Virus record (IMG/VR): IMGVR_UViG_3300027985_000843
Span: 1 to 64,000 of that record
Length of the DNA stretch: 64,000 bases
Strand: one strand, 5' to 3'
The notes below the pieces were generated by a model, which searched no databases, had not been told where the DNA came from, and saw only the letters and a program-made list of their open reading frames with translations. Made by a program: the position numbers and the translations under genes. This document shows, piece by piece, positions 560-32,014 of the stretch (positions are counted from its first letter, which is position 1; each line of letters starts with the position of its first letter).

Positions 560-1309
560 ATGGAGTCGATCATCGCAAAAGCTGTCAATCGGTACCTCGT
601 GGCGAAAGTCATCAACCGCTACCTCGACCGAATTGGGAGGGCGCCCTTCCAGATGTCCATGGGCGGATGGGACGGAGTCGACCACTACTGGCCGACCTTC
701 AAGGACTTCGAGAACTGGTCCGAGAAGCGTGACCGTTGGGGCCACACCTACGAGGCCATGTACCAATACGACAGCACGAGCGAGAGCGGCTTCGGTCCCA
801 CGCTCAACCTGTTCGTCGACTTCGACGCCGCCAAGTACGTCGACACGAGCGGCAGCCAACCGATCAAGTGGGAAGCCACCTTCCACGGATCATCCAAGAA
901 GGGCACGGTTCGGAAGGTCGAGGACATCCGAGGGCTGATGGACAACCTGATCCGGGAAGCCAAGAAGGTCCGCGACAAGATCCAGGACCAGCTCAGCAGC
1001 GCAGGCGGCACCAACTGGGACACGCACTTCGATGGGTACGAGCTTTCGGCTCAGTTCCACAGCCCTCATCCTGAGAGCGAAGCCAGCATGACCGTGGTCT
1101 TCGACGAGCCCGACGAGGTCCTGTTCGGGACCAGCGGCGAGAAGGGGAATGCCCGCATCTGGTTCTCACTCGGATCCGATTACGAAGGACACTTTGGCAA
1201 GAAAGAAGTCACCAAGTCCTACAAGACCACAGGTGACGTCGAAAAGGTCCTCAAGGAAGCCGAAAAGCTCTTCGATAAGTGGTACCAGGAAGCCCAGCCG
1301 AAAGACTGA
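560..1309 (+). CDS. Hypothetical protein, putative virion-associated, with two N-terminal xV(I)NRYL motifs
   Basis: MESIIAKAVNRYLVAKVINRYL; start reassigned to 560 from class III motif spacing. Confidence 0.7.
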   Translation: MESIIAKAVNRYLVAKVINRYLDRIGRAPFQMSMGGWDGVDHYWPTFKDFENWSEKRDRWGHTYEAMYQYDSTSESGFGPTLNLFVDFDAAKYVDTSGSQPIKWEATFHGSSKKGTVRKVEDIRGLMDNLIREAKKVRDKIQDQLSSAGGTNWDTHFDGYELSAQFHSPHPESEASMTVVFDEPDEVLFGTSGEKGNARIWFSLGSDYEGHFGKKEVTKSYKTTGDVEKVLKEAEKLFDKWYQEAQPKD

Positions 1310-1336
1310 CTCGGCCTCCACCCCTTCCCAGCCAAC

Positions 1337-1343
1337 CGGTGTA
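1337..1343 (+). promoter_or_regulatory. Class II promoter motif upstream of tRNA
   Basis: CGGTGTA, 11 nt before tRNA 5' end. Confidence 0.65.
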
Positions 1344-1354
1344 TGTTCTGACCT

Positions 1355-1430
1355 GGGTCCGTCGTCCAGTGGTTAGGGCAGCGAATTTTAATCTCGCCTA
1401 TCGGGGGTTCGAATCCCCTCGGACCCGCCA
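1355..1430 (+). tRNA. tRNA with apparent TTA anticodon (ochre suppressor); Glu/Gln-like body; encoded CCA
   Basis: Acceptor GGGTCCG/CGGACCC, D arm GTCC-AGTGGTTA-GGGC, anticodon arm GCGAA-TTTTAAT-CTCGC, T arm GGGGG-TTCGAAT-CCCCT, 3' GCCA. The tRNA call is firm; the anticodon register is less so. Confidence 0.88.
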
Positions 1431-1449
1431 GAGCGAAAGGGTGGTTACC

Positions 1450-2349
1450 ATGGCAACGTTCGAAGACAGGGCACGGCTCCTGGACAGTATCGACATACAG
1501 TACATCCAGGCGTCTAAGTGGAAAGACAAGCGACGTCAGGACCTGGAGCTGTTCGAATCGGTCGAGCTGCCCCTGGACCCCGACCACTGGTGTAGCCTGT
1601 GCATGAGCGAGGGAGCCTCCTACGTCGGAGGCTGCTGCGGGACCATGTCCCACGTCCAGGACCTGCTCGAACATGTCTTCCGCATGGGTAACGGATACAT
1701 CCGGATGAATCAGTTCGCCAATCTCGTCGAAGCCATCCTCGATCACGGCGACTTCGAAGGGAAGATCCGGTTCGACAAGTTGGATCGGTCCATCGAAGAC
1801 ATCGCGGCAGAAGCCAAGGACTGTAGCGTGTGGGAGAGCTACAGCCCCTGGGATCTCATCGCCCTCACCTGGCACCTGACCAAGGACTTCTACTCCCCCA
1901 AGACGCCTACTCCGTACAACCAAGACTTCTCCGAGGTCGAGAAGGCCATCCACACCCTGCATCACGGGGCGTCGACCCTGAGCTGGGCCCTTCTGTGTCA
2001 AAAAACCAGTACCCCCGACGGCGAGTTCGATCTGGCGAGCCAGAGCCGGGGCAACCGTTCCGTGCTGCTGTACCGGCTCATCCCCGCCCTCAGGACGCTG
2101 TTCAATCGAATCGACGAGCTTGACGCTGGCCCCTTCGATGGCGTGGCACTCGTGGACACAGAGATCGACCGCAACGCCATCGCCCACAACAACCTCGGGC
2201 TGTGCATCTTCGGTTCGGAAGAAGACGCTCGCAAGCTCGTTGCCTTGTTGGACGAGGACGAAGCCAAGAAGATCGAACTGCGCCCCGTACAGGTCTCGAA
2301 AGAAAACGGCGTCGTTTTCAAAGATTCTTCCGAACCTGCCAAGCTCTAG
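1450..2349 (+). CDS. Hypothetical protein
   Basis: Long ORF; ATG 1450 follows the tRNA with an AAAGGG SD-like element. Confidence 0.7.
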   Translation: MATFEDRARLLDSIDIQYIQASKWKDKRRQDLELFESVELPLDPDHWCSLCMSEGASYVGGCCGTMSHVQDLLEHVFRMGNGYIRMNQFANLVEAILDHGDFEGKIRFDKLDRSIEDIAAEAKDCSVWESYSPWDLIALTWHLTKDFYSPKTPTPYNQDFSEVEKAIHTLHHGASTLSWALLCQKTSTPDGEFDLASQSRGNRSVLLYRLIPALRTLFNRIDELDAGPFDGVALVDTEIDRNAIAHNNLGLCIFGSEEDARKLVALLDEDEAKKIELRPVQVSKENGVVFKDSSEPAKL

Positions 2350-2364
2350 CCCCGTAGTAGGGGC
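2330..2364 (+). promoter_or_regulatory. Class I (putative early) promoter
   Basis: CCGAAC-N17-CGTAGTA-N5-ATG(2365); only copy with a 17-nt spacer. Confidence 0.8.
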
Positions 2365-2877
2365 ATGACTACCTCAAACACCGAAATCAAGGTTGGCGAC
2401 TACGTCCGAAGCTTCGACTTTGCGAATCCTCGCGATGCTGAAGAAAACCGCGACCTGACCGGCCCGAACGCCTCCTACGTCGAGGGTACCGTCGTCGAAA
2501 TCGGCAAGGGCGACCCCGACGAGAACCCTGCGGGCTACACCTGCTACAAGATTCTCGTCCAAAAGTGGGTCTTGCATGGTAAGCCCATGAAGACCGGCGG
2601 CCACGTGTACCCGCCCGTCAACGGAACCCCCTCTTGGCTCGGTGGCTTCACTAATGGTGTCGAGAAGATCACCGTCACTCCGGTCACCGTCGAGCTGGGC
2701 GCCTACAATGGCAGCCCTTCCATCATCGCCAAAATGGAAGAAACCCTCAAATACATCGAGGATGGAGCCAAGTCGTGGGCCGGGACCCAAGAGGAATACG
2801 AAAAGTGGGCCCTGGACATCGCCAGCGGCATGCTCGTCTCAATCTCCACCAAGCTCGTGACGAAGGCAGCAAAATGA
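2365..2877 (+). CDS. Hypothetical early protein
   Basis: ORF directly after class I motif; N-terminal SH3-like IKVGDYV pattern. Confidence 0.75.
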   Translation: MTTSNTEIKVGDYVRSFDFANPRDAEENRDLTGPNASYVEGTVVEIGKGDPDENPAGYTCYKILVQKWVLHGKPMKTGGHVYPPVNGTPSWLGGFTNGVEKITVTPVTVELGAYNGSPSIIAKMEETLKYIEDGAKSWAGTQEEYEKWALDIASGMLVSISTKLVTKAAK

Positions 2878-3044
2878 GCAGCAATCAGCAAGCTCTGAGG
2901 TCCTTTGACGCCTACTGCGACTCCCTTCCGTCCAAGAAGAGAGCCGCCGTCCGACAAGCCTACGAGAAGGCTCGGGAGACGCACAACATCGCGGAGTCCA
3001 TCCGCATTGCCCTCAACTCCCCAGAAGCACAGACCAAACGATGA
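2874..3044 (+). CDS. Small hypothetical protein
   Basis: ATGA overlaps at both ends. Confidence 0.55.
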   Translation: MSSNQQALRSFDAYCDSLPSKKRAAVRQAYEKARETHNIAESIRIALNSPEAQTKR

Positions 3045-3262
3045 CCCAAGAAGAGCTGGAACAAGCCGCCAAGGAATTCTTGGCGGACAAGGACGGCTAT
3101 TCCCTGTGGTGTATAGCCACTGGGGGCCTTAGTTTCACGACGTACGAAGACGAGCTGGAGGCCAAGTACGGTGAGAGTGAACTTCAAGCCGTAAAGAACG
3201 CGATCTATCGAGAGGTGGATCGCATGAAGAATTCTCCGAACTCTTCTGAGCCGGGAGCGTAG
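3041..3262 (+). CDS. Small hypothetical protein
   Basis: ATGA overlap with upstream ORF. Confidence 0.6.
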   Translation: MTQEELEQAAKEFLADKDGYSLWCIATGGLSFTTYEDELEAKYGESELQAVKNAIYREVDRMKNSPNSSEPGA

Positions 3263-3269
3263 TAGGGAC
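3236..3269 (+). promoter_or_regulatory. Class I promoter
   Basis: CCGAAC-N16-CGTAGTA-GGGAC-ATG(3270). Confidence 0.85.
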
Positions 3270-3629
3270 ATGGCTACCCTCCTCGTCACTGACAAAAGCG
3301 GACTGGTTATCGGGCGCGTGTCGGCGAAAGCCGGAATGGTCACCCGCCACTGCGGAACCGTCACCCGATCGACGGCCATGGCCGTGTGGACTGACAAGCC
3401 GTCCTCACGCCTTCATGGCATGCATCGGCCCATCGCGTGTACCGTGAACTACACCAAGGAAATCGCGAACGATTCCACATTCGTTCCGTGCGGCTTCCTC
3501 AGTCAGAGGTCGGCGGACGAGCTTCGCGGGCAGCTCGCCAAGGGGCTGAGTGTTCGCGAAATCGCACGCAATTACGCGACCTACGTCGATACCGTCAAGC
3601 TGGTGCTCAACAGCTACCCCGCCAACTGA
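3270..3629 (+). CDS. Hypothetical protein, possible C-terminal HTH
   Basis: KGLSVREIARNYATYVDTVK resembles an HTH. Confidence 0.65.
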   Translation: MATLLVTDKSGLVIGRVSAKAGMVTRHCGTVTRSTAMAVWTDKPSSRLHGMHRPIACTVNYTKEIANDSTFVPCGFLSQRSADELRGQLAKGLSVREIARNYATYVDTVKLVLNSYPAN

Positions 3630-3682
3630 ATGAAGGGGGTGCGATCGTTCTCAGGGCCGACTCAACCAAGACACCGAAAATT

Positions 3683-3716
3683 CCGAACCTCTTCCGAGAT
3701 GGAGCGTAGTAGGGAC
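3683..3716 (+). promoter_or_regulatory. Class I promoter
   Basis: CCGAAC-N16-CGTAGTA-GGGAC-ATG(3717). Confidence 0.85.
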
Positions 3717-4259
3717 ATGAGCATCGAATTCACCTCTGACTGCCCCACCACCGAAACCACGAAGCCTGAGCCCTGCCTCTGTGCCCAGATGGCGGAACGG
3801 TGGATCGATGCCATGGATGGCGACTGGTCCGAGGCCGTCAAGGTCAACCTCAAGGCGGAAGCCAACCCCGCGTGCCCCTTCTGCAAGGGCACGGGTATTG
3901 AGGGATTCACCCGCGACGACCGCCCCCACATCAACTGGGCGAACGACAACGGTGTCCGCGTCCTCGCGACCCTGGGCATTGTTGGCGAAGATGCCCCCTA
4001 CGGCGAGATGACCATTGCGGAGGCCAGAAGGGCCGTCATGCGGGCCCGCTCTCGCTCCGACCTCTCTGCCTACACCCGGGAGGAAGAAGTTCGCCACGGG
4101 GCCCCCAGGGCCGACGAGAACGGTGTAGTAGAGCTGAAGCCCCTTCGGGTCTACAGCCCCTCCCTGGACGAGAACTCTATCCAGGATCGTATCGAGCAGT
4201 TCGCTCACTTCGTCGAGGAGTCTGCCGCCCGAGGAGCCACCCTCGTTCGTTGGGGTTAA
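3717..4259 (+). CDS. Hypothetical protein with CxxCxGxG zinc motif
   Basis: CPFCKGTG; start reassigned from class I motif. Confidence 0.7.
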   Translation: MSIEFTSDCPTTETTKPEPCLCAQMAERWIDAMDGDWSEAVKVNLKAEANPACPFCKGTGIEGFTRDDRPHINWANDNGVRVLATLGIVGEDAPYGEMTIAEARRAVMRARSRSDLSAYTREEEVRHGAPRADENGVVELKPLRVYSPSLDENSIQDRIEQFAHFVEESAARGATLVRWG

Positions 4260-4262
4260 GCC

Positions 4263-4484: not shown

Positions 4485-4506
4485 CGGCCGGGAGCGTAGT
4501 AGAAGC
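4473..4506 (+). promoter_or_regulatory. Class I promoter
   Basis: CCGAAC-N16-CGTAGTA-GAAGC-ATG(4507). Confidence 0.85.
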
Positions 4507-4788
4507 ATGAACACCAACAGCGAACTGCGGGCCATTGTCGAGAACCTCTGCACCAATCTCTCTACCAACAAGGTCCCCTGCAAGACCAACCACGTCGTTC
4601 TGAGCTTCGGCTGTGCCAATGGTGAATGGGCCTGGGGTATCGTGGTTGCAGCCGTCGGGAGCGTCGCCTCCAAGCATAAGGGCTACCGCCCTCGCCTCTG
4701 CGGAGAGGGTGAGACTCCTTCGGCAGCCATCGACGACATGCTGTCCGCACCGGCCTACGGTCGATGGCGTAAGGACCTCGCAAAATAA
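4507..4788 (+). CDS. Hypothetical early protein
   Basis: ORF directly after class I motif. Confidence 0.65.
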   Translation: MNTNSELRAIVENLCTNLSTNKVPCKTNHVVLSFGCANGEWAWGIVVAAVGSVASKHKGYRPRLCGEGETPSAAIDDMLSAPAYGRWRKDLAK

Positions 4789-4790
4789 TT

Positions 4791-4824
4791 CCGAACCCTT
4801 GACCTCCGGGAGCGTAGTAGAGAC
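4791..4824 (+). promoter_or_regulatory. Class I promoter
   Basis: CCGAAC-N16-CGTAGTA-GAGAC-ATG(4825). Confidence 0.85.
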
Positions 4825-4959
4825 ATGACGACCTCAACCAACCCCACCTACACCGCTGCCCAACGCCGCTTCTGGGCCCCCAAGGGACAGCGGAACTACT
4901 ACCAGCATGCTGTCGCCCGTTACCGCCGTCCTTCCGATGCGGCTGTCCTTCTTTCGTAA
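4825..4959 (+). CDS. 44-aa early microprotein (absent from ORF track)
   Basis: MTTSTNPTYTAAQRRFWAPKGQRNYYQHAVARYRRPSDAAVLLS*, ATG at exact class I spacing. Confidence 0.6.
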   Translation: MTTSTNPTYTAAQRRFWAPKGQRNYYQHAVARYRRPSDAAVLLS

Positions 4960-5257
4960 GCTGTTTCGTAACCCGTACCGAGTTCCGGCAGAGCAGGCCG
5001 TAACGCCCGAGCCCCCTCCCGTGGTTCACGCAAGGACAAGCAAGGATCGAGAACACGTTACCGAGTTCGAGATGACTCTCTTTCAGGCCAACAAGTGCCC
5101 AGACTGCGAGCAGGAAGGGTTCCTGGAAGGGCCTCACGGTGGGCTGTGCGTCAACTTCAAGTGTGCCAACCCTCAGTGCGGGAGCCGGTTCAACCACATG
5201 GGCCCCTTTGGGATCGATCGCATCTCCGATGCCAGCCCAGACAAGGTATCTCAGTGA
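4937..5257 (+). CDS. Zinc-ribbon protein
   Basis: CPDC...EGPHGG...C..PQCGSRFN. Confidence 0.6.
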   Translation: MRLSFFRKLFRNPYRVPAEQAVTPEPPPVVHARTSKDREHVTEFEMTLFQANKCPDCEQEGFLEGPHGGLCVNFKCANPQCGSRFNHMGPFGIDRISDASPDKVSQ

Positions 5258-6042: not shown

Positions 6043-6351
6043 ATGAGCACACCACACCACCCAACCTTCGTTGTGTTTGACGACCGCGAGCCCGATGGGC
6101 TCGGGCGCCGCGCCTTCACCCTCTTCTGGCTCTCGGACGGGATCTTCCGTCCGGAGCTGCATAAGGACGGCAAGCCCGTCGGGTACCGCCGAGCCCAGTG
6201 CTTCTGTACACAGCCTGATCGGTTCCTCAAGGATGGGGCCGAGGTCGTGACAGAACCAGAGGCCGAGTCGCAAATGGCTGAGCTACACGAGGAGCTGATT
6301 CATGCTCGTGACGCATACCGAGCCGCACGAGGAGATGATTCATGCCCGTGA
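6043..6351 (+). CDS. Hypothetical protein
   Basis: ORF with GAGG SD, in operon. Confidence 0.55.
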   Translation: MSTPHHPTFVVFDDREPDGLGRRAFTLFWLSDGIFRPELHKDGKPVGYRRAQCFCTQPDRFLKDGAEVVTEPEAESQMAELHEELIHARDAYRAARGDDSCP

Positions 6352-7646
6352 CACATCATGAGCTGAGGTGGCGTTGCTCAATCTCGACCTGTTGTCACGA
6401 AAACCGTGGTCGGGACAAGAATTGCCGGAACTGTGGCAAGCCAAAGGAAGGGGAGGTGTTCTACGACCCCGAAGAGGGCGAGGGCCCCGCCCTCACGGAT
6501 GCGGTCCTCATCCAGCAAGCAACAGCTGGAACTGACTGGCAGTGCACTTTCTGTGGCTCGCATCAACGACGCAGCAGCGGAGAGTGCGCCAACTGCGGAG
6601 CTGAGCAAGCCATGAGCCGCGACCAGGCGACCAAGTGGGACGATGGTCACGTGGGTGAGGGTGGCCTAAGCCCGGCAGAAGAGGAACGTGTCGAGGCCCT
6701 GCTGAAGGCTGCGAAGCGTGTCGAGGCCCTGCCCAAGCCCAAGCGTCGCCCCAAGCTGACAGATGAGGACGTCGAGGAGATCTGCTCGGAAGACCCCTCC
6801 CCATCTTCCACTGTCATTGCAACCCCGGTGCCCGTCTACCGGCGAAACTATCGGCCTTTGGCCCTTGGCAGTGCCTTGTTCTTCGGAATTCTACTTCTTG
6901 GGGCCCTGGTCTTCTTCTTAGTTCGGCCTGTGGAAGTGGATGCCCGTGTTCAGGGCGTCTCATGGAAATACACGGTCCAGGTGGAGCGGGAGAAGACTGT
7001 GCACGAGGAAGGGTTCGACGCTCCCATCGGGGCCTTCGATGTGCTTCCCATGGGGGAGAGGCATCACCACTACCGACAGGTGCCGGACGGCTTCAGGACG
7101 GTGAGCTACCTGGAGGAATACCAGTGTGGGACTATTCCTCGGACCTGTACGCGCACACCCAGGACCTGCACACGCACGCCTCGAACCTGCACGAACAACC
7201 AAAACGGTTTCAAGACGTGCATGGGTGGGGATGAAATATGCTCGGGAGGACAGGAGAGTTGCACCGGCGGCGGCCCAAGGTATTGCACTCGCCCGGCCAC
7301 AAGGCAGGAGCCCAAGTTCCGGGACGAGTCGGTCACGGCCATGTGGTACTCGTGGAACGTGTGGCGATGGGTCCTGGACCGGCAGGTGAAGGCAGAGGGC
7401 TCAACAGACAAGCCTCATTGGCCGTCAGCCGAGAAGATTGCCCTCAACAAGAATCTGCCCAATGGTGTCCGGGCGGAGAGGGAGGAAAGGGTCACGAGCT
7501 ATACGGTGACCTTCCGGGATGACGAAGGAGAGAGCTACACGTACCACCCGAAAGAGATTGGCGAGTTCGAGAGCTTCCACGCTGGTGAGCCCCAGCTCAT
7601 CAAGGTCAACAAGCTGGGCAGTGTCGAGATTGTGAGGGCCCAGTGA
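6342..7646 (+). CDS. Zinc-finger, single-TM, Cys-rich membrane protein
   Basis: Two N-terminal W-x-C..C..N..C..CG fingers, TM LALGSALFFGILLLGALVFFLV, Cys-rich distal region. Confidence 0.75.
   Translation: MPVTHHELRWRCSISTCCHENRGRDKNCRNCGKPKEGEVFYDPEEGEGPALTDAVLIQQATAGTDWQCTFCGSHQRRSSGECANCGAEQAMSRDQATKWDDGHVGEGGLSPAEEERVEALLKAAKRVEALPKPKRRPKLTDEDVEEICSEDPSPSSTVIATPVPVYRRNYRPLALGSALFFGILLLGALVFFLVRPVEVDARVQGVSWKYTVQVEREKTVHEEGFDAPIGAFDVLPMGERHHHYRQVPDGFRTVSYLEEYQCGTIPRTCTRTPRTCTRTPRTCTNNQNGFKTCMGGDEICSGGQESCTGGGPRYCTRPATRQEPKFRDESVTAMWYSWNVWRWVLDRQVKAEGSTDKPHWPSAEKIALNKNLPNGVRAEREERVTSYTVTFRDDEGESYTYHPKEIGEFESFHAGEPQLIKVNKLGSVEIVRAQ
7137..7193 (+). repeat. Degenerate 21-nt tandem repeat encoding (PRTCTRT)x~3
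   Basis: Protein reads PRTCTRTPRTCTRTPRTCT with synonymous divergence between units. Confidence 0.8.
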
Positions 7647-9966: not shown

Positions 9967-10842
9967 TCAGACCGTCGCCACCAACTCATCAGGCTGTTGA
10001 ACACCCATCCTCTCCCATCGAACCCGAAGCCCTTTACCTGGAATCCATTCCAAGTAGTGGTTCGCCACGAGCCACATGATTCGGAGGATGATTGTGACGG
10101 GGAGAGCCCCATAGCCAAGCCCCATCATCGACAGTAGAAGGCCGATGCCTGACTCCGGCAGGGAGGTCAGAAGCTCCGTGAAACTGATGGCCCCTGTGAA
10201 GCCTTGTAACAAACTTTCAATGTCCCAGGAAATCTCTGCCACATTTGCCCACACAAAAATGAAGATGGCCGCGAGAAGGGGCCTCTTCAACGTCGGCAGG
10301 TACTTGTGAAGCCACGCGTCTACCTTCTGTGCCCCGCCCTTGATCTTCTGGACGGCGGCCCAGATGCGCGGCGACTGCTTGGCGATTCGCACCATGAGGT
10401 CTGTGAGGCTCGGAGCCTTATGCTTGGCGACGAAGTAGATGCTGAGGGGAAAGGTCTCCTGGATCTTCTTGCCGAGCCATTGAATACCCTGCAACCCTGT
10501 CTTGGCGAGTTCCTTGGCTCGGGTGGCGATGATCTTGGCCTTCTCCATCAGGGACATGTTGCTCATATCTGGCAGGCCCAGAGCACGACTCAAGACTTCC
10601 CATGCCCGCCCAGGGGCGGCCTTGAACAGGTCCAGGAGCCGCTTGACGCCCCGGAGGATACCGAGGGCCGCCTCACGGTCGGAGCTGCCCTCACGGGTTT
10701 GCCAGAAGCCTTGGGCGAGGGCTTCCACACACTCCATGGGCGGGGCCCAGGACGCAGTTCGAACGCCGTGATCGGTGTACTGTTCCTCAACTGCCAAACG
10801 GATGAGGTACCGGTCCCGGACTCGTAGGGCGAGATCGCTCAT
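9967..10842 (-). CDS. Membrane protein with N-terminal RVRDRYL motif (putative late)
   Basis: MSDLALRVRDRYL; hydrophobic C-terminal helices; class III motif TTCTCTTGTC (10856-10865) 13 nt upstream. Confidence 0.7.
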   Translation of the reverse strand: MSDLALRVRDRYLIRLAVEEQYTDHGVRTASWAPPMECVEALAQGFWQTREGSSDREAALGILRGVKRLLDLFKAAPGRAWEVLSRALGLPDMSNMSLMEKAKIIATRAKELAKTGLQGIQWLGKKIQETFPLSIYFVAKHKAPSLTDLMVRIAKQSPRIWAAVQKIKGGAQKVDAWLHKYLPTLKRPLLAAIFIFVWANVAEISWDIESLLQGFTGAISFTELLTSLPESGIGLLLSMMGLGYGALPVTIILRIMWLVANHYLEWIPGKGLRVRWERMGVQQPDELVATV

Positions 10843-13322: not shown

Positions 13323-13605
13323 CCAACCTTCCAAACACCTGACGAGTCCATCCGTTCACATGACCATGTGCATTTGAGATCTGCACGGCTCCGTCCTCCC
13401 GCCTACCCGTGCACAGGTGCAAGTAGTAGCTGCCCCGAACTCGGCAGAAGACGGCATCACCCACCTTCACGTCCTCGATCTTGACGGGCTCCACCGTCAC
13501 CTTCTGCCCGCTGCGGACAATCGGAGTCATCGAGTTGCCGTGAGGGCGGTAGGACACCGTCTCCCCGCGACTCAGCTGTTCTGCTATCAGTGTATTGCGT
13601 CCCAT
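13309..13605 (-). CDS. Peptidase S24/S26-like protein
   Basis: HGNSMTP...SG..V.V..P...KVGDAVF...YYLH. Confidence 0.75.
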   Translation of the reverse strand: MGRNTLIAEQLSRGETVSYRPHGNSMTPIVRSGQKVTVEPVKIEDVKVGDAVFCRVRGSYYLHLCTGRREDGAVQISNAHGHVNGWTRQVFGRLVKVE

Positions 13606-14102
13606 TAGAATGGTATGTCGTCGATGTCCTCGGAGGCGTAGACCACCTCACCGCCCATTTCGGTGTGTCGGCCCGGAGGCATACGATCCAGTTGGAGGTT
13701 GGCCCAGTTCAAGTCCTTGCGCAGGTCGGATAGATTACGATTGACACGATTCAGCTCTTGCTGGAGATCGTAGGCTTTCTGTACGAGCTTGACCTCTTCC
13801 TGGTTGAGGGCACCCCGGAAGGCCCAGAGGGCTTTCATGAAGTGTTCCTCAGCCTCTTCACAGGTCTTGAAGACTCCAGGCGTGTCTGGCTTCACGGTGT
13901 CCGGGGTGGAGTGGACCTCTCGGCCTCGAACGGAAGAGTGACTGGGGGTTATCCAGTTGCCATCGTTGTCGACTCCCTTGACGCCCATCTTGACGACAGC
14001 GATGTTACTGACACTGGAACCAATCACCAACCATACGTTCTCTGGAACGGGTTGGGGGCGGATCATCCTCCAGTCAGCTTCCAGGTCCCACTCGTCAGTC
14101 AT
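13605..14102 (-). CDS. Hypothetical protein with SSB-like DDIPF tail
   Basis: Ends EDIDDIPF; N-terminus DEWDLEADWRMIRPQP; coiled coil. Confidence 0.7.
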   Translation of the reverse strand: MTDEWDLEADWRMIRPQPVPENVWLVIGSSVSNIAVVKMGVKGVDNDGNWITPSHSSVRGREVHSTPDTVKPDTPGVFKTCEEAEEHFMKALWAFRGALNQEEVKLVQKAYDLQQELNRVNRNLSDLRKDLNWANLQLDRMPPGRHTEMGGEVVYASEDIDDIPF

Positions 14103-21783: not shown

Positions 21784-21819
21784 TACACCGGGTCGGGTGC
21801 CGTGGGCAATCTTCTTGTG
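21784..21819. promoter_or_regulatory. Divergent class II (-) and class III (+) promoters
   Basis: TACACCG (21784-21790) toward pyrE; TCTTCTTGTG(21810)-N13-ATG(21833). Confidence 0.7.
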
Positions 21820-21832: not shown

Positions 21833-22489
21833 ATGGATTCCGTTGGACGCGTCATCCGCATTTTTCTGGCTACGAGAACTCACTACAAGGTGGACTTTCG
21901 CAAGCTCAGGGAAATGAACAGCCCCGCCTTCCGCCAAGAGCAGATGCGGATGGAGGGGGGCTACAACAAGTGGCGCGTTGAACTCGTCCCCATCCGAGAC
22001 ATCCGGGTGCCCAAGGTCTGGAACCCCGGCCGGTTCGACCAAGCCAAGAAGCTCATCGACAAGGGCACGCCCCTCGACCCCATCCGAGCCACGAAGGTCG
22101 GGGGTAAGTGGGAGATCGATGACGGCATCCACCGAACCAACGTGAGCATCGCCAAAGGATACACGCACGTTCCGGTTTTGGTGCCCGAGTGGGTCGCAAC
22201 CCCCGAAGCATACGAAGCTCCCGAACCAGAAAAGAAGCAACTTACCAAGGGCACATGGATCAAGCTGCGCGAGCCCTTCGACGGCCGGTCCGTCGGATGG
22301 GTGGACGAACAGCTTGGAAGCAACCAACCACGAGGCGTCCGCCGATGGCGCTATGGGCTCGCCCTCATCGGCCCCGGCGAAGACTGGCCCGACACAGGGG
22401 ACTTCTCTGATGATGAGCTGGACGTCAGATCCCCGCCTCCGTGGGCCATCGAAGCTCGTCTAAAGGCCGAAGCGGCGGGCTGGGCTTAG
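21833..22489 (+). CDS. ParB/Srx-like domain protein with N-terminal RVIRIFL motif
   Basis: LDPI...WEIDDGIHR...GYTHVPV. Confidence 0.75.
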   Translation: MDSVGRVIRIFLATRTHYKVDFRKLREMNSPAFRQEQMRMEGGYNKWRVELVPIRDIRVPKVWNPGRFDQAKKLIDKGTPLDPIRATKVGGKWEIDDGIHRTNVSIAKGYTHVPVLVPEWVATPEAYEAPEPEKKQLTKGTWIKLREPFDGRSVGWVDEQLGSNQPRGVRRWRYGLALIGPGEDWPDTGDFSDDELDVRSPPPWAIEARLKAEAAGWA

Positions 22490-26185: not shown

Positions 26186-26207
26186 TACACCGGAGACCCC
26201 CGGTGTA
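26186..26207. promoter_or_regulatory. Back-to-back class II promoters
   Basis: TACACCG-N8-CGGTGTA. Confidence 0.8.
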
Positions 26208-26701
26208 TGATCGATTTCGTGCCTCTCACTTCCAATCAGATCACGGCCATCTATGCCCTAGATTGGCTGCTCGACGTGAGCGAAGACCGTCGCCGTTCGG
26301 GTCGCTCACTTGCGTGGGGCGCGGCCCTCATCAGACAAGCCCTGCGCCACCCAGGCAGACGTATCGCCTACTGTGACCACATCACCTCGATGGGCGGGGA
26401 GGAAGGGTACGAAAACCAACGCCGTATCATGTACCATGTCGTGCGCAACCTCATAGCCAGACACCCGGAACTCGACAGGCTCCAATGGGAGTTCCCCAAC
26501 ATGCGGTATTTTTGGCTGGCGTCTGATCAACTTGTGGACACCGACTGGATGCCGATGCCCCACGGCACAATGGACCCTGTCGTGTTGGGTCCCGAACCCG
26601 AGCCCCCACCTGAACCCGAGCTATCCGAACCGGCGTTCCCGGCCCCTACCTGCTGGGAGAGACTACTCGCGGAGAAAAAGGGCGACAACCCGTTCGATTG
26701 A
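26207..26701 (+). CDS. Hypothetical protein with C-terminal TCWxRL motif (likely GTG start at 26219)
   Basis: RRSGRS P-loop-like stretch, Pro-rich linker, ends PTCWERLLAEKKGDNPFD. Confidence 0.65.
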   Translation: MIDFVPLTSNQITAIYALDWLLDVSEDRRRSGRSLAWGAALIRQALRHPGRRIAYCDHITSMGGEEGYENQRRIMYHVVRNLIARHPELDRLQWEFPNMRYFWLASDQLVDTDWMPMPHGTMDPVVLGPEPEPPPEPELSEPAFPAPTCWERLLAEKKGDNPFD

Positions 26702-26863
26702 TGCCTTCTTGGGCTTGCCGTTCTCCGTCTTGAACTCGTAATCCGGCTTCATTTTCTTGTAGATCCCCATGATGAAGTCGTATTCCTCAGCACGACCCTG
26801 CTCCTTGGCGATCTCCTTGGCCTTCTGCCACTTCTCTTCGTCTCGCTTGGTCTTCGTCGGCAT
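26663..26863 (-). CDS. Small putative late protein with C-terminal RVVALFL motif
   Basis: DEEKWQKAK...IMGIYKKM...ASIERVVALFL; class III motif TTCTCTTGTG (26877-26886) 13 nt upstream. Confidence 0.7.
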   Translation of the reverse strand: MPTKTKRDEEKWQKAKEIAKEQGRAEEYDFIMGIYKKMKPDYEFKTENGKPKKASIERVVALFLRE

Positions 26864-26873
26864 ATCTCTGGCG

Positions 26874-27505: not shown

Positions 27506-27516
27506 GTCATTTACCC

Positions 27517-27540: not shown

Positions 27541-27549
27541 AGGAGGAAC

Positions 27550-27912: not shown

Positions 27913-28442
27913 TGAAATGGCGAAAGGGCGACCTCGGACGGTTCGAATCCGAAGACAGGAACCTGCCTCGATTCGAAGTCATTCGAGCTGTGAAGGATGA
28001 GCACGTCGAGGTGTGGTACGGTGGGACCGATAAGACCACGCTCGTGCCGTGGAGCATCTTTTTCAAGGAGTGCACCAACCTGTGGAATTGGAAGCTCGAT
28101 GTGACCATCCCCCCATGGTTGGCCCCTGGTAGGGAGTTCACGGCCATGGGAAGCTTCAAGCAGGCGCTCATCAAATACAGTGTCGGACACCACATCGGGC
28201 ACAAGGTGTTCTACGGTACGTCGGAGCACGAGCACCTGTACGAGGCGGACAACGCCCGCCTCCTGGTTCGGAACATCCGGCACGACCATGCATCATGCCT
28301 CGTGCTCCCTGAGGGTCCTCTCGTGCTCGTGAGTATCGAAGATGCTGTTCGGTTTCGTCGAACCACTGCATGGTCCCGCCTGCTGGATACCAACGACATC
28401 TTCGAAGAGGAAGTTGACGATCTGGCGGAGATCTTTGGCTAG
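27912..28442 (+). CDS. Hypothetical protein with C-terminal TAWxRL motif
   Basis: Ends TTAWSRLLDTNDIFEEEVDDLAEIFG. Confidence 0.7.
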   Translation: MKWRKGDLGRFESEDRNLPRFEVIRAVKDEHVEVWYGGTDKTTLVPWSIFFKECTNLWNWKLDVTIPPWLAPGREFTAMGSFKQALIKYSVGHHIGHKVFYGTSEHEHLYEADNARLLVRNIRHDHASCLVLPEGPLVLVSIEDAVRFRRTTAWSRLLDTNDIFEEEVDDLAEIFG

Positions 28443-28633
28443 GCGTCCTTCAGTCTCTGAGCCCACGTCATGGGCTTCTTGCTCTCCTCCAGCTCAGCTT
28501 TCAACGACTGGTTTTCTTCTCGCAGGGCGCGGTTCTCCGCTTCCAAGGCGCGAACCCTGGTACGCAGGGCTTCGATCTGAGGTTGGAGATCCCTGCCGTC
28601 TTGCGGCCACAGGTCTAGGTCAACACAGGTCAT
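28439..28633 (-). CDS. Short coiled-coil protein with C-terminal TWAQRL motif
   Basis: Heptad repeats; ends KPMTWAQRLKDA. Confidence 0.65.
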   Translation of the reverse strand: MTCVDLDLWPQDGRDLQPQIEALRTRVRALEAENRALREENQSLKAELEESKKPMTWAQRLKDA

Positions 28634-28643
28634 GTTGTGAAAA

Positions 28644-28660
28644 TACACCGACTCGGTGTA
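28644..28660. promoter_or_regulatory. Back-to-back class II promoters (perfect palindrome)
   Basis: TACACCG-act-CGGTGTA. Confidence 0.8.
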
Positions 28661-28710
28661 TGCTTAGGGGAGGGAGACTCAGTATCGAGCCCCGCATCAG
28701 GAGAAGAGAG

Positions 28711-28869
28711 TTGGATCTAGACTTCGGAAAGCTGACATCGCAAGACCTCAAGGCACTGTCCAAGGCTGTGGACACAGAACGCAAGAGGCGCGGGAAGCGC
28801 AGTCCGGACAACCATGAACCACCCCGGTGGGCCGTCCCGAAGGCAGTCCTGGTGAACCCCAAGGACTGA
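28711..28869 (+). CDS. Small hypothetical protein
   Basis: TTG start after AGGAG; LTSQDLKALSKAVDTERKRR. Confidence 0.5.
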   Translation: MDLDFGKLTSQDLKALSKAVDTERKRRGKRSPDNHEPPRWAVPKAVLVNPKD

Positions 28870-28870
28870 C

Positions 28871-29728
28871 TCAGCTTTTCTGGAATCGACTGTAGTTCGC
28901 TTGGATCTCGCTCGGTGTGAGGATCTTGGCGACCTCGAAGTGCATACCGTCGAGGCGGTCGTACTTCGGAGGCCACCCCCAACCTCCCCACCAGAAGCCC
29001 CAGCGAGCTGCAATGGGGACGATCTCTCGGACGCTGTTATCTGCCCCCACGAGGGCGGGACGCTGCCCGAGATAGTTGCCGTGCGTGTTGATGTCGAACG
29101 CCGTCCCCCACGCGTGGTTGCTCAGAGTCGTTCGAGACCCTCGAACGAAACGAGGAGCCCAGCTGCCACCCCACTGGTGGATGAGGACGGTTAGGTTCTC
29201 GTGTTCAATCTCCTCGAAGAGACCCAGGAGCTGGTCCTTGACCTTCGCGTTCCAGTAGATACGGCCGCTGGCCGGGAACCCGTTGATCATCGTACCTTTG
29301 AGAGTCGGAAGAACCATCTGGGTCAGGTTCTGACGCTTCCACTCAGCAGAGATGCTCACGCCCTCGGGGTTTGCCTTCGTTGGTGTCGGCGTGTGGGGGA
29401 TGTCGCCGAAAAGGGTGATACGACGCTGCCAGGTGGCCGGCTTCATGTCCGTGGGCATCGGGGGCCATGCAGGACCTTCCTTGTCGTTGTTCCCGGGCCC
29501 GACAATGACGAGGCCGTCAGCCATGGCCGAGCCCCACGTCTGGTTGCCCACGATCCCGTCCACGGGCTCCAGGTACGACTGTCTCTGGTAGGACATGGTC
29601 GCTTGGCGGGTCTTGTCTCCGAAGCTACCGTCGACGGCTCCGGCATAATAGCCAAGCCCCAGCAGGAAATTCTGCCACTTGCGTACGAGGGGGCCTCTGG
29701 ACCCCTTCATGATGGGTTCTAGTGTCAT
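28871..29728 (-). CDS. Endolysin-like protein: PG-binding domain plus M15 peptidase
   Basis: GSRGPLVRKWQ..L..LGY..VDGSFG..T..A...YQ..VDGIVG; R..SNHAWGTAFDIN...DGMHFE. Confidence 0.9.
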   Translation of the reverse strand: MTLEPIMKGSRGPLVRKWQNFLLGLGYYAGAVDGSFGDKTRQATMSYQRQSYLEPVDGIVGNQTWGSAMADGLVIVGPGNNDKEGPAWPPMPTDMKPATWQRRITLFGDIPHTPTPTKANPEGVSISAEWKRQNLTQMVLPTLKGTMINGFPASGRIYWNAKVKDQLLGLFEEIEHENLTVLIHQWGGSWAPRFVRGSRTTLSNHAWGTAFDINTHGNYLGQRPALVGADNSVREIVPIAARWGFWWGGWGWPPKYDRLDGMHFEVAKILTPSEIQANYSRFQKS

Positions 29729-29809
29729 TTCACTTTCCTTCGTTGATTTGTGCCACCTGAAGCCGCTGGCCGGTGTCTTTTACTACATCGACTATACACC
29801 ACGGGAACC

Positions 29810-30136
29810 ATGACAACAGACGACCACAAACCAGAAGCACCCCTGAGTAGTCCACCTGTGTCCCAGACGATTTTGAGGCTACGGCAGCAAATCGAAGAAG
29901 CTCGAACCCCAGAGGAGAAGATGGCGTTGATGCTGACCCTCGCGGCTCAGTTCGACCTTGAGCACAGCCTTCTCGACGACGGCTACAACGAGAACTACCA
30001 CAGCTACTTCGAAGAATACGAAGAAGCCCGCATGCACTTCCAGCATACGGCCCTTCGCCTCGCACGCCTGGCCCTCAGCGTGATCGATGACGAAGTGCCG
30101 AACACCTCGCCGCCTCCCCCCAAGAACGTCAACTAG
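29810..30136 (+). CDS. Hypothetical protein
   Basis: Helical acidic ORF. Confidence 0.55.
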   Translation: MTTDDHKPEAPLSSPPVSQTILRLRQQIEEARTPEEKMALMLTLAAQFDLEHSLLDDGYNENYHSYFEEYEEARMHFQHTALRLARLALSVIDDEVPNTSPPPPKNVN

Positions 30137-31020
30137 AAGTCATCGAAATCTCGACCGAGACGAGAGAAAGCCGTCGGTGCCGGCCCTCTGGGGGGCTCTG
30201 GCGGGGCCGGGCGCCTCGCAGGGGGCTCTGGCCGTCTCGGAGTCGAAGCGGGCCGTGTAGGGGGCTCTACGGCTCGAATAGGCCGAACAGCAGCGACCCT
30301 GGTCCCAGTGGCGTGGAACCTTCCGTCCTCACCCCTTTGACTGACCACGGTACCCCCGCCCCCGAAGCTCCCGCCGTATCGGCGGCCGTAATTCGGAGAG
30401 TCGTCGATGTCGATGTCCGGCATCGGCAGTTGGAATGGGCTGCCGGCACCCAGGGCTTCTTGGGCCTGCAAAGCTTCCCGGTTCATGAACAGGGACGACA
30501 GATCGGGGCTGGGAACAGAAGCAAGGTCATCAGCAAAGTTCGCATCCCCTCCAAGTTCCCAATCATCGTCGGTCGAGGTCGAGGTCGAAACCCCCGCTTG
30601 CTGCAACCGGGCGGCCCGATTCGCTATCGCAATGGCACGGGCGTCATGCTGCTCTACAATGGCAGCCGTGACCCGTTGTGTCGCCTGCGACAGAGCGTTG
30701 GCAACACTCTCGATGTTCGGTGTAAAGTCAATGTTGATGTCATCGGCGGCGAACGTAGTGAACTCCACCTCGAAGGGGACCTGCGCTTGTGATGCCTCAA
30801 CCTCGGCCAAAGGTTCGTAGGTGGGCATCTTGGGCCTGCCAAAGGTGGACGCGAATTGGGAGGACTGGACAGCCCTCATTTCCCTCACTGCGCCCGCAGA
30901 CAAGAGCATCTCCGGAGTGAGATCAGGGAGGACAGCTTCTCTGGCAGCACTGCCGTTCCGCTGACGCTCTGCCTCGACAAGTTCTTGGAGTCGTTTTTCG
31001 AGTTCGGAAGCCATGGTCAC
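30133..31020 (-). CDS. Low-complexity protein with C-terminal TAFxRL motif
   Basis: Pro/Arg-rich linker, ends PTAFSRLGRDFDDF. Confidence 0.7.
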   Translation of the reverse strand: MTMASELEKRLQELVEAERQRNGSAAREAVLPDLTPEMLLSAGAVREMRAVQSSQFASTFGRPKMPTYEPLAEVEASQAQVPFEVEFTTFAADDINIDFTPNIESVANALSQATQRVTAAIVEQHDARAIAIANRAARLQQAGVSTSTSTDDDWELGGDANFADDLASVPSPDLSSLFMNREALQAQEALGAGSPFQLPMPDIDIDDSPNYGRRYGGSFGGGGTVVSQRGEDGRFHATGTRVAAVRPIRAVEPPTRPASTPRRPEPPARRPAPPEPPRGPAPTAFSRLGRDFDDF

Positions 31021-31049
31021 ACAGTAGAGATCTAATCAGAGGATTTTCG

Positions 31050-31493
31050 ATGGGTTACCTGATAGACGATCAGTCAGTACCTCCCGTGAGAGATCGGAAA
31101 TGGCGGATATGGTCCGCCCCGGTGTACCGGTTTCTGAGCAAACCCAGATCCTGGTCTGAACTCAAGCAGTGGTCACGACAGATGAAGGTCATGAGCATCC
31201 CACGGATGACTCAGTGCCTGGCTTGGCTGGACCACATGAAGGTGGCCTACACGACCGGCCACGAGGTGAGGGACATTCGGTGGGTGTCAGTCGTCACGGA
31301 CATGTTTGACAGTGTTCCGGACGTCCTCTCCCACGAAAAAGCCGAGGATGATGGTGAAGGCGCCGGTGGTGAGAGCGACGCCCAAGGGCCCCTTGATGAA
31401 GAGGTAGATGGTGGCGGAGAAGAAGAGGACGAGCAGGATGACGGTGATGATCTTGGCGACGACTTTCACGATCTGCTCTCCAGGAACCGTTGA
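31050..31493 (+). CDS. Hypothetical protein (3' part overlaps an opposite-strand ORF)
   Basis: Plausible N-terminal domain; acidic tail is antisense to 31287-31469. Confidence 0.4.
   Translation: MGYLIDDQSVPPVRDRKWRIWSAPVYRFLSKPRSWSELKQWSRQMKVMSIPRMTQCLAWLDHMKVAYTTGHEVRDIRWVSVVTDMFDSVPDVLSHEKAEDDGEGAGGESDAQGPLDEEVDGGGEEEDEQDDGDDLGDDFHDLLSRNR
31287..31469 (-). CDS. Small 2-TM membrane protein (holin-like topology)
   Basis: Two hydrophobic helices, charged C-terminus, GTGA overlap with the 2H gene. Confidence 0.6.
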   Translation of the reverse strand: MKVVAKIITVILLVLFFSATIYLFIKGPLGVALTTGAFTIILGFFVGEDVRNTVKHVRDD

Positions 31494-32014
31494 ACCACTC
31501 GGGCAGCCTTCGTTGTCAGCACGAACGGGAAGGACACCACGAGCTTGTCATCCCCTGAGTTGCCTCCCCACAGCACCAGCTCGTGGGCGCCCCACTCGAC
31601 AGTGGGAATGCTCCGGTCCGAGAAATCCTCACCGCTGTCATCGTAGGCCAACGTCACGTGCGGCTTGAACTCGGGGTGGCGCTGGCTGTATTCGACGCCC
31701 TCTTCGTCGAACACCTTGCGGATGCGTTCCCGCAGAGCATGCAGCTCATCGGATTCCACCCGGCAGATGATGGGCTTGTTGCCGTCACTGGGGAAGCTCG
31801 TAACCAACGAGGTACCCACGGTGAATGGCTTCGTCTGTGAGGTCACTCCGAACGCCACCCGAATAATCTCGGCCAACTCGTTGATGTCCAAGTCGTCGCC
31901 GAAGAAAAACAGGGTCACATGGAAGTGTGACGTGGGCTCTCTGTCACCCGGTACATCGATCCCGCCGAGCAGACGGGCCGTTTCGTGCGGCACAGCCAAA
32001 CCAAGAAATGCCAT
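31466..32014 (-). CDS. 2H phosphoesterase (ThpR/Acb1-like) with C-terminal RVVQRFL motif
   Basis: Two HxT motifs, FHVTL and FKPHVTLAY. Confidence 0.88.
   Translation of the reverse strand: MAFLGLAVPHETARLLGGIDVPGDREPTSHFHVTLFFFGDDLDINELAEIIRVAFGVTSQTKPFTVGTSLVTSFPSDGNKPIICRVESDELHALRERIRKVFDEEGVEYSQRHPEFKPHVTLAYDDSGEDFSDRSIPTVEWGAHELVLWGGNSGDDKLVVSFPFVLTTKAARVVQRFLESRS

What the first reader, a model, noticed from the sequence alone, without database searches (positions are those of the whole stretch)
560..32014. Second peptide code: [RK]V-x-x-[RIL]-[YF]L at termini of class III proteins, a candidate capsid-targeting signal
Seen: KAVNRYL plus KVINRYL (560, N-term), RVRDRYL (10842, N-term), RVIRIFL (21833, N-term), RVVALFL (26863, C-term) and RVVQRFL (2H protein, C-term). 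All five are unrelated proteins in class III units, and none carries the TAWxRL tag. Established analogy: T4 internal proteins use a short capsid-targeting sequence for head packaging. Inference: an amphipathic helix that loads cargo (a ParB-like protein, a 2H phosphoesterase, a membrane protein) into the prohead for injection.
Basis: partly seen in the sequence, partly recalled or inferred. Interest (0 to 1): 0.78.

Follow-up and report, generated by a model that had tools for sequence, protein, structure and literature searches.

The report
Shared terminal docking helix, huge phages
A short peptide (consensus A-x-R-V-A-x-R-[Y/F/W]-L) really is attached to the ends of many unrelated proteins in this 372-kb phage and across its whole clade of huge phages, and it most likely works as an address tag that docks them onto one common partner, probably the assembling phage head, although no experiment shows this yet.

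Summary
All six heptads are where stated. The pattern hits 5 predicted proteins against 0.18 expected, always within 16 residues of an end. The five carriers are mutually unrelated. In four of them homologues keep the motif: the 291-aa family (N-end), the 2H phosphoesterase family (89 of 120 tails), a weakly ParB-like family (N-end) and the 66-aa protein (C-end). The fifth is an orphan.

A scoring matrix trained only on foreign 2H tails finds 135 hits against 1.4 expected in 1.6 Mb of related phages. Of these, 79 are terminal against 0.17 expected, in 22 families. Consensus: [M/S/L]-A-x-R-V-A-x-R-[Y/F/W]-[L/A/V/M].

The motif is a predicted helix lying outside the catalytic fold and joined by variable linkers.

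In relatives, carriers crowd between the portal and prohead-protease genes, including a poly(A)/CCA-type nucleotidyltransferase and giant topoisomerase-IB proteins. Terminase, portal, protease and major head protein never carry it.

So it is a modular docking tag. Head loading is the best-supported use but is inferred from gene position only. It is not a T4-type capsid targeting sequence. The link to "class III" units holds in the window (p about 0.001), but their timing is unknown.

The parts
560..1309 (+). 249-aa orphan protein with two tandem N-terminal copies of the motif: KAVNRYL at nt 578-598 and KVINRYL at nt 605-625.
   Evidence: No homologue among 5.8 billion proteins. No Pfam or PHROG hit.
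483..536 (+). 17-codon mini-ORF (M-RVDERFL-RAEAAALIG) that starts 11 nt after a GGTGTA promoter-like element at 466. It is a seventh copy of the motif, just upstream of gene 560.
   Evidence: Whether it is translated is unknown.
9967..10842 (-). 291-aa all-helical protein family found across the clade, with the motif RVRDRYL at residues 7-13 (nt 10824-10804). A TCTTGTCTG element lies at about 10866-10855.
   Evidence: 75 homologues. The N-terminal A-L-R-V-R-D-R-[Y/W/F]-L-[I/V] is kept down to about 40% identity. AF2 places residues 3-23 in a helix with pLDDT 80-89. No fold match.
21833..22489 (+). 218-aa protein with a DGxHR motif, weakly ParB_N-like. Motif RVIRIFL at residues 6-12 (nt 21848-21868). 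TCTTCTTGTGA at 21810 lies 12 nt before the ATG.
   Evidence: Homologues carry RVAARFF, RVAARFA, RVVHRYA, RVVRAYL, RIVQRYA, KVAARYA, RVAYRYL or RVAARFV just before the conserved core. ParB_N is sub-threshold.
26663..26863 (-). 66-aa lysine-rich protein with C-terminal RVVALFL at residues 58-64 (nt 26692-26672), two residues before the stop. A TCTTGTGTGAC element lies at about 26886-26873.
   Evidence: Its 62-aa homologues L161/L164:9806-9994 lie directly upstream of the terminase gene and end in A-R-R-V-A-Q-R-Y-A-A-K-A-R.
31466..32014 (-). 182-aa 2H phosphoesterase (LigT/CPDase-like) with the appended C-terminal helix A-A-R-V-V-Q-R-F-L-E (motif at nt 31501-31481), four residues before the stop.
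   Evidence: Pfam 2_5_RNA_ligase2. AF2 pLDDT 91, with helix 168-181 at pLDDT about 70. Solved 2H structures align only to residues 1-166/170, Z up to 18.5. 89 of 120 homologues keep the motif in the tail.
33467..33490 (-). TCTTCTTGAATTTCGGCTCCTGT element plus a GTG start. It heads the tightly spaced run of genes for a 61-aa protein, a 418-aa protein, the 2H protein and a 60-aa membrane protein. This places the 2H gene in a 'class III' unit.
   Evidence: The same gene order and an ATCTTCTTGAGTG element occur in relative L119.

Best explanation
Shown:
- The heptad is the core of a conserved short helix with consensus [M/S/L]-A-x-R-V-A-x-R-[Y/F/W]-[L/A/V/M].
- A whole clade of huge phages (roughly 300-530 kb, metagenomic) attaches it through variable linkers to unrelated proteins. 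It sits at the extreme N-end (first Arg at residue 4-17), at the extreme C-end (3-7 residues trailing), sometimes at both ends or in tandem, and at domain junctions of giant proteins.
- It lies outside the catalytic fold.

Inferred:
- The helix is a docking tag that tethers all these proteins to one common phage-encoded partner.
- The most likely partner is the assembling head (core, portal or inner shell surface). The carriers would then be loaded as cargo and delivered with the DNA. Carriers include RNA and DNA enzymes such as a 2H phosphoesterase, a poly(A)/CCA-type nucleotidyltransferase, giant proteins that contain topoisomerase IB and a ParB-like protein.

My estimates: about 0.9 that it is a real modular docking motif, and about 0.45 for the full statement including head loading.
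For: Reality of the motif:
- 5 hits against 0.18 expected, all terminal.
- It is conserved in four unrelated families.
- A matrix trained only on 88 foreign 2H tails gives 16 hits against 0.53 in the window plus 9 relatives.
- The same matrix gives 135 against 1.4 (79 terminal against 0.17) in 80 terminase-centred loci, in 22 families.
- It gives 13 against 1.05 in the complete 485-kb genome LR745208.1.

Modularity:
- In 2H tails the linker is 4-41 aa and 2-49 aa follow the motif.
- The 2H fold ends at residue 166-170, before the helix.
- The family encoded next to the 291-aa gene carries the motif at both ends.
- There are tandem copies in the 560 protein and in a 103-aa family.
- In LR745208 the motif follows the 2H domain inside a larger protein.

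Head context:
- The gene order is terminase (Walker A GRRSGKT; annotated as such in relatives), portal (weak Portal_Mu), nucleotidyltransferase ending in a tandem motif, topoisomerase-IB giant, prohead protease (weak PHROG hit), then major head protein (PHROG E = 1.6e-48).
- Hit density is 0.4-1.06 per 1000 aa between portal and protease. It is about 0.03 in terminase and portal and 0-0.06 in protease through major head protein.
- In another subclade the 66-aa protein's homologue sits directly upstream of the terminase gene.
Against: - There are no virion proteomics, no cultured member and no RNA data.
- Gene position is only circumstantial evidence.
- In the window itself the carriers lie among accessory genes, with no recognisable structural gene nearby.
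- In LR745208 the carriers are scattered over the genome.
- The candidate scaffold and the major head protein do not carry the motif, so simple mimicry of the scaffold is not supported.
- The 291-aa family has long hydrophobic helices that could be membrane-spanning.
- No partner was identified.
Confidence: 0.45

Rival explanations
1. It is the same docking helix, but the hub is not the virion. The tag would recruit clients to an intracellular assembly. Candidates are a ring or platform of the replication and late-transcription machinery (used like PIP-box or clamp-binding peptides), or a complex built by the 291-aa family and its neighbour family.
For: - Placement at the extreme ends on many different clients is how clamp-binding peptides are used (established knowledge).
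- A clamp-loader-like AAA+ gene, a NusG/KOW-like gene and a sigma70 region 4-like gene directly precede a 103-aa carrier in relatives.
- Carriers are scattered genome-wide in LR745208.
- In several relatives the 291-aa gene and the 2H gene are neighbours.
Against: - No carrier is a recognisable DNA polymerase, ligase, helicase or flap nuclease. Ten LR745208 carriers have no significant Pfam domain (only one sub-threshold hit).
- The consensus is basic and helical, unlike QL[SD]LF or QxxLxxFF.
- No clamp gene was identified.
- The strongest clustering is between portal and protease.
Confidence: 0.25
2. The motif is the recognition or cleavage signal of the prohead maturation protease. It would mark propeptides at the ends and processing sites inside giant head proteins.
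For: - Copies lie near ends and recur inside giant proteins encoded next to the portal.
- A prohead protease gene lies a few kb downstream.
Against: - The motif is predicted to be a stable alanine-rich helix, not an extended site.
- C-terminal copies leave only 3-7 residues, so cleavage there would achieve little.
- No conserved residue follows at a fixed distance.
- The major head protein and the scaffold candidate, the usual substrates, lack it.
- Tandem copies lie only 9 residues apart.
Confidence: 0.1
3. It is a membrane-binding amphipathic helix that parks soluble enzymes on the cell membrane next to membrane proteins of the same units.
For: - Hydrophobic moment is 0.3-0.76 with net charge 0 to +2.
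- The 2H gene is always followed by an overlapping gene for a 60-aa membrane protein.
- The 291-aa family has hydrophobic helices and sits next to a membrane-anchored transglycosylase gene.
Against: - Mean hydrophobicity is low (-0.42 to +0.24) and the hydrophobic face is only 2-3 residues.
- Membrane helices tolerate sequence drift, but here R, V, A, R and the aromatic residue are each kept in about 85-90% of 121 copies.
- The reversed pattern is not enriched.
Confidence: 0.07
4. There is no shared function. Alanine-, arginine- and valine-rich helices would arise often in GC-rich genomes, and the reader picked look-alikes.
For: The pattern was defined after seeing the instances. The genome is 59% G+C.
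Against: - Composition-preserving shuffles give 0.19 hits against 5.
- An independently trained matrix gives about 100-fold enrichment and about 460-fold for terminal hits in held-out genomes.
- The motif is kept while the linkers vary.
Confidence: 0.02

Closest known systems
T4 capsid targeting sequence (CTS) of the internal proteins and Alt
   Same: Highly diverse proteins, many of them counter-defence, share only a short conserved tag that puts them into the scaffolding core of the prohead (PMC3012670). The tag is portable.
   Different: - The T4 tag is N-terminal only and is cut off by the prohead protease (established knowledge).
- Here the tag is N-terminal, C-terminal, at both ends or internal.
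- No cleavage consensus follows it, and packaging is not shown.
Encapsulation peptides of bacterial microcompartments
   Same: A short predicted amphipathic helix sits at the N- or C-end of unrelated enzymes. It is joined by a poorly conserved linker of variable length, and a few residues may trail it (PMC4594438). This matches the anatomy here.
   Different: - Those peptides keep only a hydrophobic/hydrophilic pattern. Here the residues themselves are conserved.
- No microcompartment shell genes were seen in the window.
Cargo-loading peptides of encapsulins (my own knowledge, not tested here)
   Same: A short terminal peptide docks cargo enzymes onto the inner face of an HK97-fold shell. A phage head is the same fold.
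   Different: - The consensus is different.
- Encapsulin cargo genes sit next to the shell gene. Here the major head protein gene is 8-10 kb from the densest carriers and the binding site is unknown.
Clamp-binding peptides (bacterial QL[SD]LF, PIP box, and the tails of T4 gp33, gp55 and gp43 that bind gp45)
   Same: Short motifs at extreme N- or C-ends tether many different clients to one hub.
   Different: - The consensus and chemistry differ: basic and helical here, hydrophobic there.
- The clients here are mostly proteins of unknown function, not replication enzymes.
Shared C-terminal helix of the staphylococcal phage 80alpha scaffold and SaPI1 CpmB (my own knowledge)
   Same: A short basic and hydrophobic terminal helix docks onto the capsid protein, and unrelated proteins share it.
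   Different: Here the scaffold candidate ends in a different conserved tail and does not carry the motif.

Membership tests
T4-type capsid targeting sequence | The tag sits at the N-terminus of every carrier | tested here: not met
   Of 121 non-redundant copies, 38 are N-terminal, 28 C-terminal and 55 internal. In the window, two of the five carriers are C-terminal.
T4-type capsid targeting sequence | Only the tag is shared among otherwise diverse proteins | tested here: met
   The five window carriers show no pairwise similarity. There are 22 carrier families in relatives.
T4-type capsid targeting sequence | The tag is removed by the prohead protease at a consensus site just after it | tested here: inconclusive
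   No conserved residue lies at a fixed distance after the motif. Actual processing cannot be seen without proteomics.
T4-type capsid targeting sequence | The tag is sufficient to load a foreign protein into heads, and the carriers are present in virions | not testable with these tools
   There is no cultured member. The nearest isolate, Tunturi_5, has 28% terminase identity, no virion proteome and no hit in its first 50 kb.
Microcompartment-type encapsulation peptide (by anatomy) | A short predicted amphipathic alpha-helix | tested here: met
   AF2 predicts helices at 168-181 (2H) and 3-23 (291-aa family). Hydrophobic moment is 0.31-0.76.
Microcompartment-type encapsulation peptide (by anatomy) | At the N- or C-end, separated from the functional domain by a poorly conserved linker | tested here: met
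   The linker is 4-41 aa in 2H tails. Solved 2H folds stop at residue 166-170, before the helix.
Microcompartment-type encapsulation peptide (by anatomy) | Microcompartment shell genes are present | tested here: not met
   No such Pfam family was found among 55 window proteins.
Clamp-binding or PIP-like peptide | Clients include the replicative polymerase and repair enzymes, and the consensus is QL[SD]LF or QxxLxxFF | tested here: not met
   The consensus is A-x-R-V-A-x-R-[Y/F/W]-L. Ten genome-wide carriers of LR745208 have no significant Pfam domain (one sub-threshold hit).
2H phosphoesterase superfamily (carrier 31466-32014) | Pfam family above threshold and the 2H fold | tested here: met
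   2_5_RNA_ligase2 scores 52 bits against a cut-off of 27. Z is 18.5 to drCPDase 5h7e and 16 to E. coli LigT.
ParB N-terminal domain (carrier 21833-22489) | Pfam ParB_N above the gathering score | tested here: inconclusive
   The window protein has no hit. Two homologues score 18-20 bits against a cut-off of 26.3. A DGxHR motif is seen by eye.

The most novel reading that the evidence does not exclude
This clade of huge phages runs a peptide address system with several codes. The known ones are RVAxR[Y/F/W]L, the C-terminal TAWxRLL type and a PELRxHLVPLL type, and each sorts sets of unrelated proteins to a different site. The RVA code would load a kit of RNA-repair and counter-defence enzymes into the head for co-injection, much as poxviruses package their early enzymes. 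The kit would include the 2H phosphoesterase, a CCA/poly(A) nucleotidyltransferase, topoisomerase IB and a ParB-like nuclease.
Probability: 0.3. Interest if true: 0.9.

Novelty: new variant of a known kind. Interest (0 to 1): 0.8.

Why it matters
Huge phages are known almost only from metagenomes, and most of their genes have no assigned function. A conserved, portable 10-residue tag shared by at least 25 protein families gives a handle on which proteins act together.

If the partner is the head, the tag predicts the injected proteome of an uncultured phage clade from sequence alone. That proteome would include an Acb1-like/LigT-like 2H enzyme and a nucleotidyltransferase. The tag would also offer a simple way to load foreign proteins into large capsids.

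Whatever the partner is, the question can be tested directly with a peptide pull-down or a structure-prediction screen.

Tried and rejected
- **DNA-level element:** rejected. Codons differ between copies, and C-terminal and foreign copies exist.
- **Reversed-helix idea:** 18 of the 2H tails carry [L/A/S]-[Y/F]-R-A-x-V-R, which reads like the motif backwards. The reversed pattern is not enriched genome-wide, at 4 hits against 3.4 expected. I dropped it as a general rule.
- **Scaffold mimicry:** the scaffold candidate and the major head protein have no copy.
- **Function of the 291-aa family:** no fold match in AlphaFold DB clusters and no Pfam or PHROG hit.
- **Atlas look-ups:** those for the neighbour family and the 849-aa protein gave nothing usable. 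The 418-aa neighbour looks like a beta-helix tailspike, but this is only a lead.
- **This genome's own head module:** I could not fetch it. Two terminase-based scans did not return the contig, so promoter class could not be compared with structural genes.
- **'Class III' element:** found only in the closest relative examined (L119) and not in L126- or L216-type genomes.
- **Sequencing runs:** only DNA runs hold the window, from a hydrothermal-vent metagenome, so there is no transcript evidence.
- **Cultured relative:** Tunturi_5 gp9 (annotated as a processivity factor) shows no similarity to the 323-aa protein encoded after the portal.
Full report
**What the window is.** The window is the first 64 kb of IMG/VR contig 3300027985_000843, which is 371,739 bp long. 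It is 59% G+C and comes from a hydrothermal-vent metagenome. It has no nucleotide match to any deposited phage, and its 858-aa and 291-aa proteins find no match there either. I called 101-103 genes with a codon-score caller of my own. Many genes start directly after one of three promoter-like elements and have no leader:
- TTCCGAAC-N16-GAGCGTAGTAGGGAC-ATG;
- CCGGTGTA-N10-ATG;
- TCTTCTTGTGA-N12-ATG.

**The observation.** The pattern hits five predicted proteins against 0.18 expected. Shuffled proteomes never exceeded 3 hits in 5000 trials. Every hit lies within 16 residues of an end, where 25% would be expected. A much looser pattern adds only one further hit, and that one is internal. The copies use different codons. 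The five carriers share nothing else; the best local BLAST match between any two of them is the motif itself. One more copy sits in a 17-codon mini-ORF at 483-536, right after a GGTGTA element and just upstream of gene 560.

**Is it conserved?**
- *The 291-aa protein (9967-10842).* It has 75 homologues on contigs of up to 438 kb. Their N-terminus reads A-L-R-V-R-D-R-[Y/W/F]-L-[I/V], drifting to RVADRYL, TVSDRYL and QVADRYL at about 40% identity.
- *The 2H protein.* It has 209 homologues. In 89 of the 120 listed, the tail after the last strand holds A-a-[R/K]-V-A-x-R-[Y/F/W]-[L/A/V/M]. The linker before it is 4-41 residues and 2-49 residues follow it.
- *The 218-aa protein (21833-22489).* It has 138 cluster representatives. 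Many of them start with RVAARFF, RVAARFA, RVVHRYA, RVVRAYL, RIVQRYA, KVAARYA, RVAYRYL or RVAARFV directly before the conserved core. This also supports the ATG at 21833 as the start.
- *The 66-aa protein.* It has 62-aa homologues that end in A-R-R-V-A-Q-R-Y-A-A-K-A-R and are encoded directly upstream of the terminase gene.
- *The 560 protein.* It is an orphan.

**Independent statistics.**
- On the window plus nine relatives' loci (71,000 aa) it gives 16 hits at 12 bits or more against 0.53 in shuffles, and 13 terminal hits against 0.12.
- On 80 terminase-centred loci (1.6 Mb, 485,000 aa) it gives 135 hits at 14 bits or more against 1.4, and 79 terminal against 0.17. The hits fall into 22 protein families.
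- On the complete 485-kb genome LR745208.1 (terminase 46% identical to that of relative L196) it gives 13 hits against 1.05, and 7 terminal against 0.2.

The logo of 121 non-redundant copies is [M/S/L]-A-x-R-V-A-x-R-[Y/F/W]-[L/A/V/M]. N-terminal copies start at residue 4-17. C-terminal copies leave 3-7 residues. Internal copies sit mostly in proteins longer than 600 aa.

**Anatomy.** AlphaFold2 models the 2H protein well (pLDDT 91). A C-terminal helix at 168-181 has lower confidence. Solved 2H enzymes (drCPDase, TT0787, LigT; Z 16-18.5) align only to residues 1-166/170, so the helix is an appendage. In the 291-aa family the motif lies in an N-terminal helix (3-23, pLDDT 80-89) that is followed by a low-confidence stretch. 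Other findings point the same way:
- the family encoded right after the 291-aa gene in distant relatives carries the motif at both ends of a core, with an acidic linker;
- a 103-aa family and the 560 protein carry tandem copies;
- in LR745208 the 2H domain is followed by the motif inside a 487-aa protein.

This is the signature of a modular linear docking motif.

**Where carriers are encoded.** In the window they lie among accessory genes and no structural gene is recognisable. The Pfam families found there are a methyltransferase, RNase HII, GmrSD, an ATP-grasp, an M15 peptidase and a transglycosylase.

In closer relatives (L119 and the contigs of P0029 and P0037) the 291-aa gene and the 2H gene are neighbours, next to a membrane-anchored transglycosylase gene. 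The 2H gene is always followed by an overlapping gene for a 60-aa membrane protein.

In more distant relatives the gene order around the terminase can be read:
- a clamp-loader-like AAA+ gene, a NusG-like gene and a sigma-like gene, then the 103-aa carrier;
- a tailspike-like protein, then the 291-aa family, then the both-ends family;
- the terminase (Walker A GRRSGKT), then the portal (weak Portal_Mu hit);
- a PolyA_pol-type nucleotidyltransferase that ends in S-R-V-A-S-R-V-A-S-R-W-L-A-S-R-R;
- a giant protein containing topoisomerase IB;
- a small SH3-plus-zinc-ribbon protein with an internal copy;
- the prohead protease (weak PHROG hit), a scaffold-sized protein, then the major head protein (PHROG E = 1.6e-48).

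Hit density is 0.4-1.06 per 1000 aa between portal and protease and 0.2-0.4 upstream of the terminase. It is about 0.03 in terminase and portal, and 0-0.06 from protease to major head protein. So the tag marks accessory proteins encoded inside the head module and never the shell-building proteins.

**Promoter class.** Three of the six genes directly headed by the TCTTCTTGTG element carry the motif, against 2 of 97 others (Fisher p = 0.0011). The 2H gene lies third in a fourth such unit. The 560 gene does not fit, because a GGTGTA element precedes it. The element is conserved in front of the orthologous genes of L119 but not in more distant relatives. Nothing here tells when it fires.

**Interpretation.** What is shown is a conserved, portable, terminal helix on unrelated proteins. 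That it docks them to one partner is an inference from this anatomy and from known systems of the same build. Those systems are microcompartment encapsulation peptides (PMC4594438), the T4 capsid targeting sequence (PMC3012670), and encapsulin cargo peptides and clamp-binding peptides (my own knowledge). That the partner is the assembling head is a further inference. It rests on gene position, on the kind of carriers (enzymes and giant proteins of the sort other viruses package) and on their absence from shell proteins. The rivals are a non-virion hub, a protease signal and a membrane helix. They are listed with their evidence. Chance is excluded.

**Membership.** It is not a T4-type capsid targeting sequence: the position rule is not met and no cleavage consensus follows. 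It has the anatomy of an encapsulation peptide but, unlike those, a conserved sequence. I found no description of it in the literature I searched; the two searches on targeting peptides returned only T4, phage P1, giant-phage and microcompartment papers.

Noticed in passing
A C-terminal [P/T]-T-[A/C]-[W/F]-x-R-L-[L/T]-[D/E] motif is often followed by an acidic tail that ends in D-x-F. A strict pattern gave 6 hits in 2245 proteins, all within 30 residues of the C-end. It aligns with the second motif on R-hydrophobic-L-[D/E].
   Followed up: partly
L159:907-1992, 2692-3330, 4592-4993; L123:6163-6894; L127:8883-9266, 6332-7156: A third terminal peptide, K-L-A-x-E-x-P-E-L-R-x-H-L-V-P-L-L-R-K, occurs on unrelated proteins near tailspike-like genes. 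It gave 13 hits, 7 at C-ends and 6 at N-ends, and none internal.
   Followed up: partly
window 1355-1430 (+): A tRNA with anticodon UUA, a predicted ochre (UAA) suppressor, sits just after a GGTGTA element at 1338. Twelve of 103 window genes end in TAA. None of the motif carriers does: the 66-aa gene ends in TAG and the 2H gene in TGA.
   Followed up: partly
window, e.g. 3258, 3705, 4495, 4813, 13038, 51423, 60042 (+); 26191(-)/26202(+), 34190(-)/34205(+), 50607(-)/50613(+): There are two further promoter-like classes with start codons 5 or 10 nt downstream, which implies leaderless mRNAs. TTCCGAAC-N16-CGTAGTA clusters at both contig ends (also 6 copies in L011). CCGGTGTA often occurs as back-to-back divergent pairs.
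   Followed up: partly
window 26663-26701: Genes 26207-26701(+) and 26663-26863(-) converge and overlap by 39 nt. The RVVALFL tail of one gene and the CWERLL...NPFD tail of the other are encoded on opposite strands of the same DNA.
   Followed up: no
window 13605-14102 (-) and 46045-46593 (+): A 165-aa protein ends in E-D-I-D-D-I-P-F, like the acidic tip of bacterial SSB. It has a paralogue-like N-terminus in the 182-aa protein at 46045.
   Followed up: no
2H homologues P0085, P0097, P0119, P0146, P0151, P0162, P0169, P0171, P0190, P0191: About 18 of 120 2H tails carry [L/A/S]-[Y/F]-R-A-x-V-R in place of the motif, and this reads like the motif backwards. The reversed pattern is not enriched genome-wide in LR745208.
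   Followed up: yes
L119:1-319, L121:1-502; P0037 contig: Relatives carry Cas-related Pfam hits (Cas_CT1975, Cas_GSU0053) and an OrfB_IS605/Cas12f-like TNB gene close to the carrier genes.
   Followed up: no
L253:10607-13348: In one relative the prohead-protease-like gene is interrupted by an intein with a LAGLIDADG endonuclease (Hint, Intein_splicing and LAGLIDADG_3 hits). The intein-free versions are 497-516 aa.
   Followed up: no
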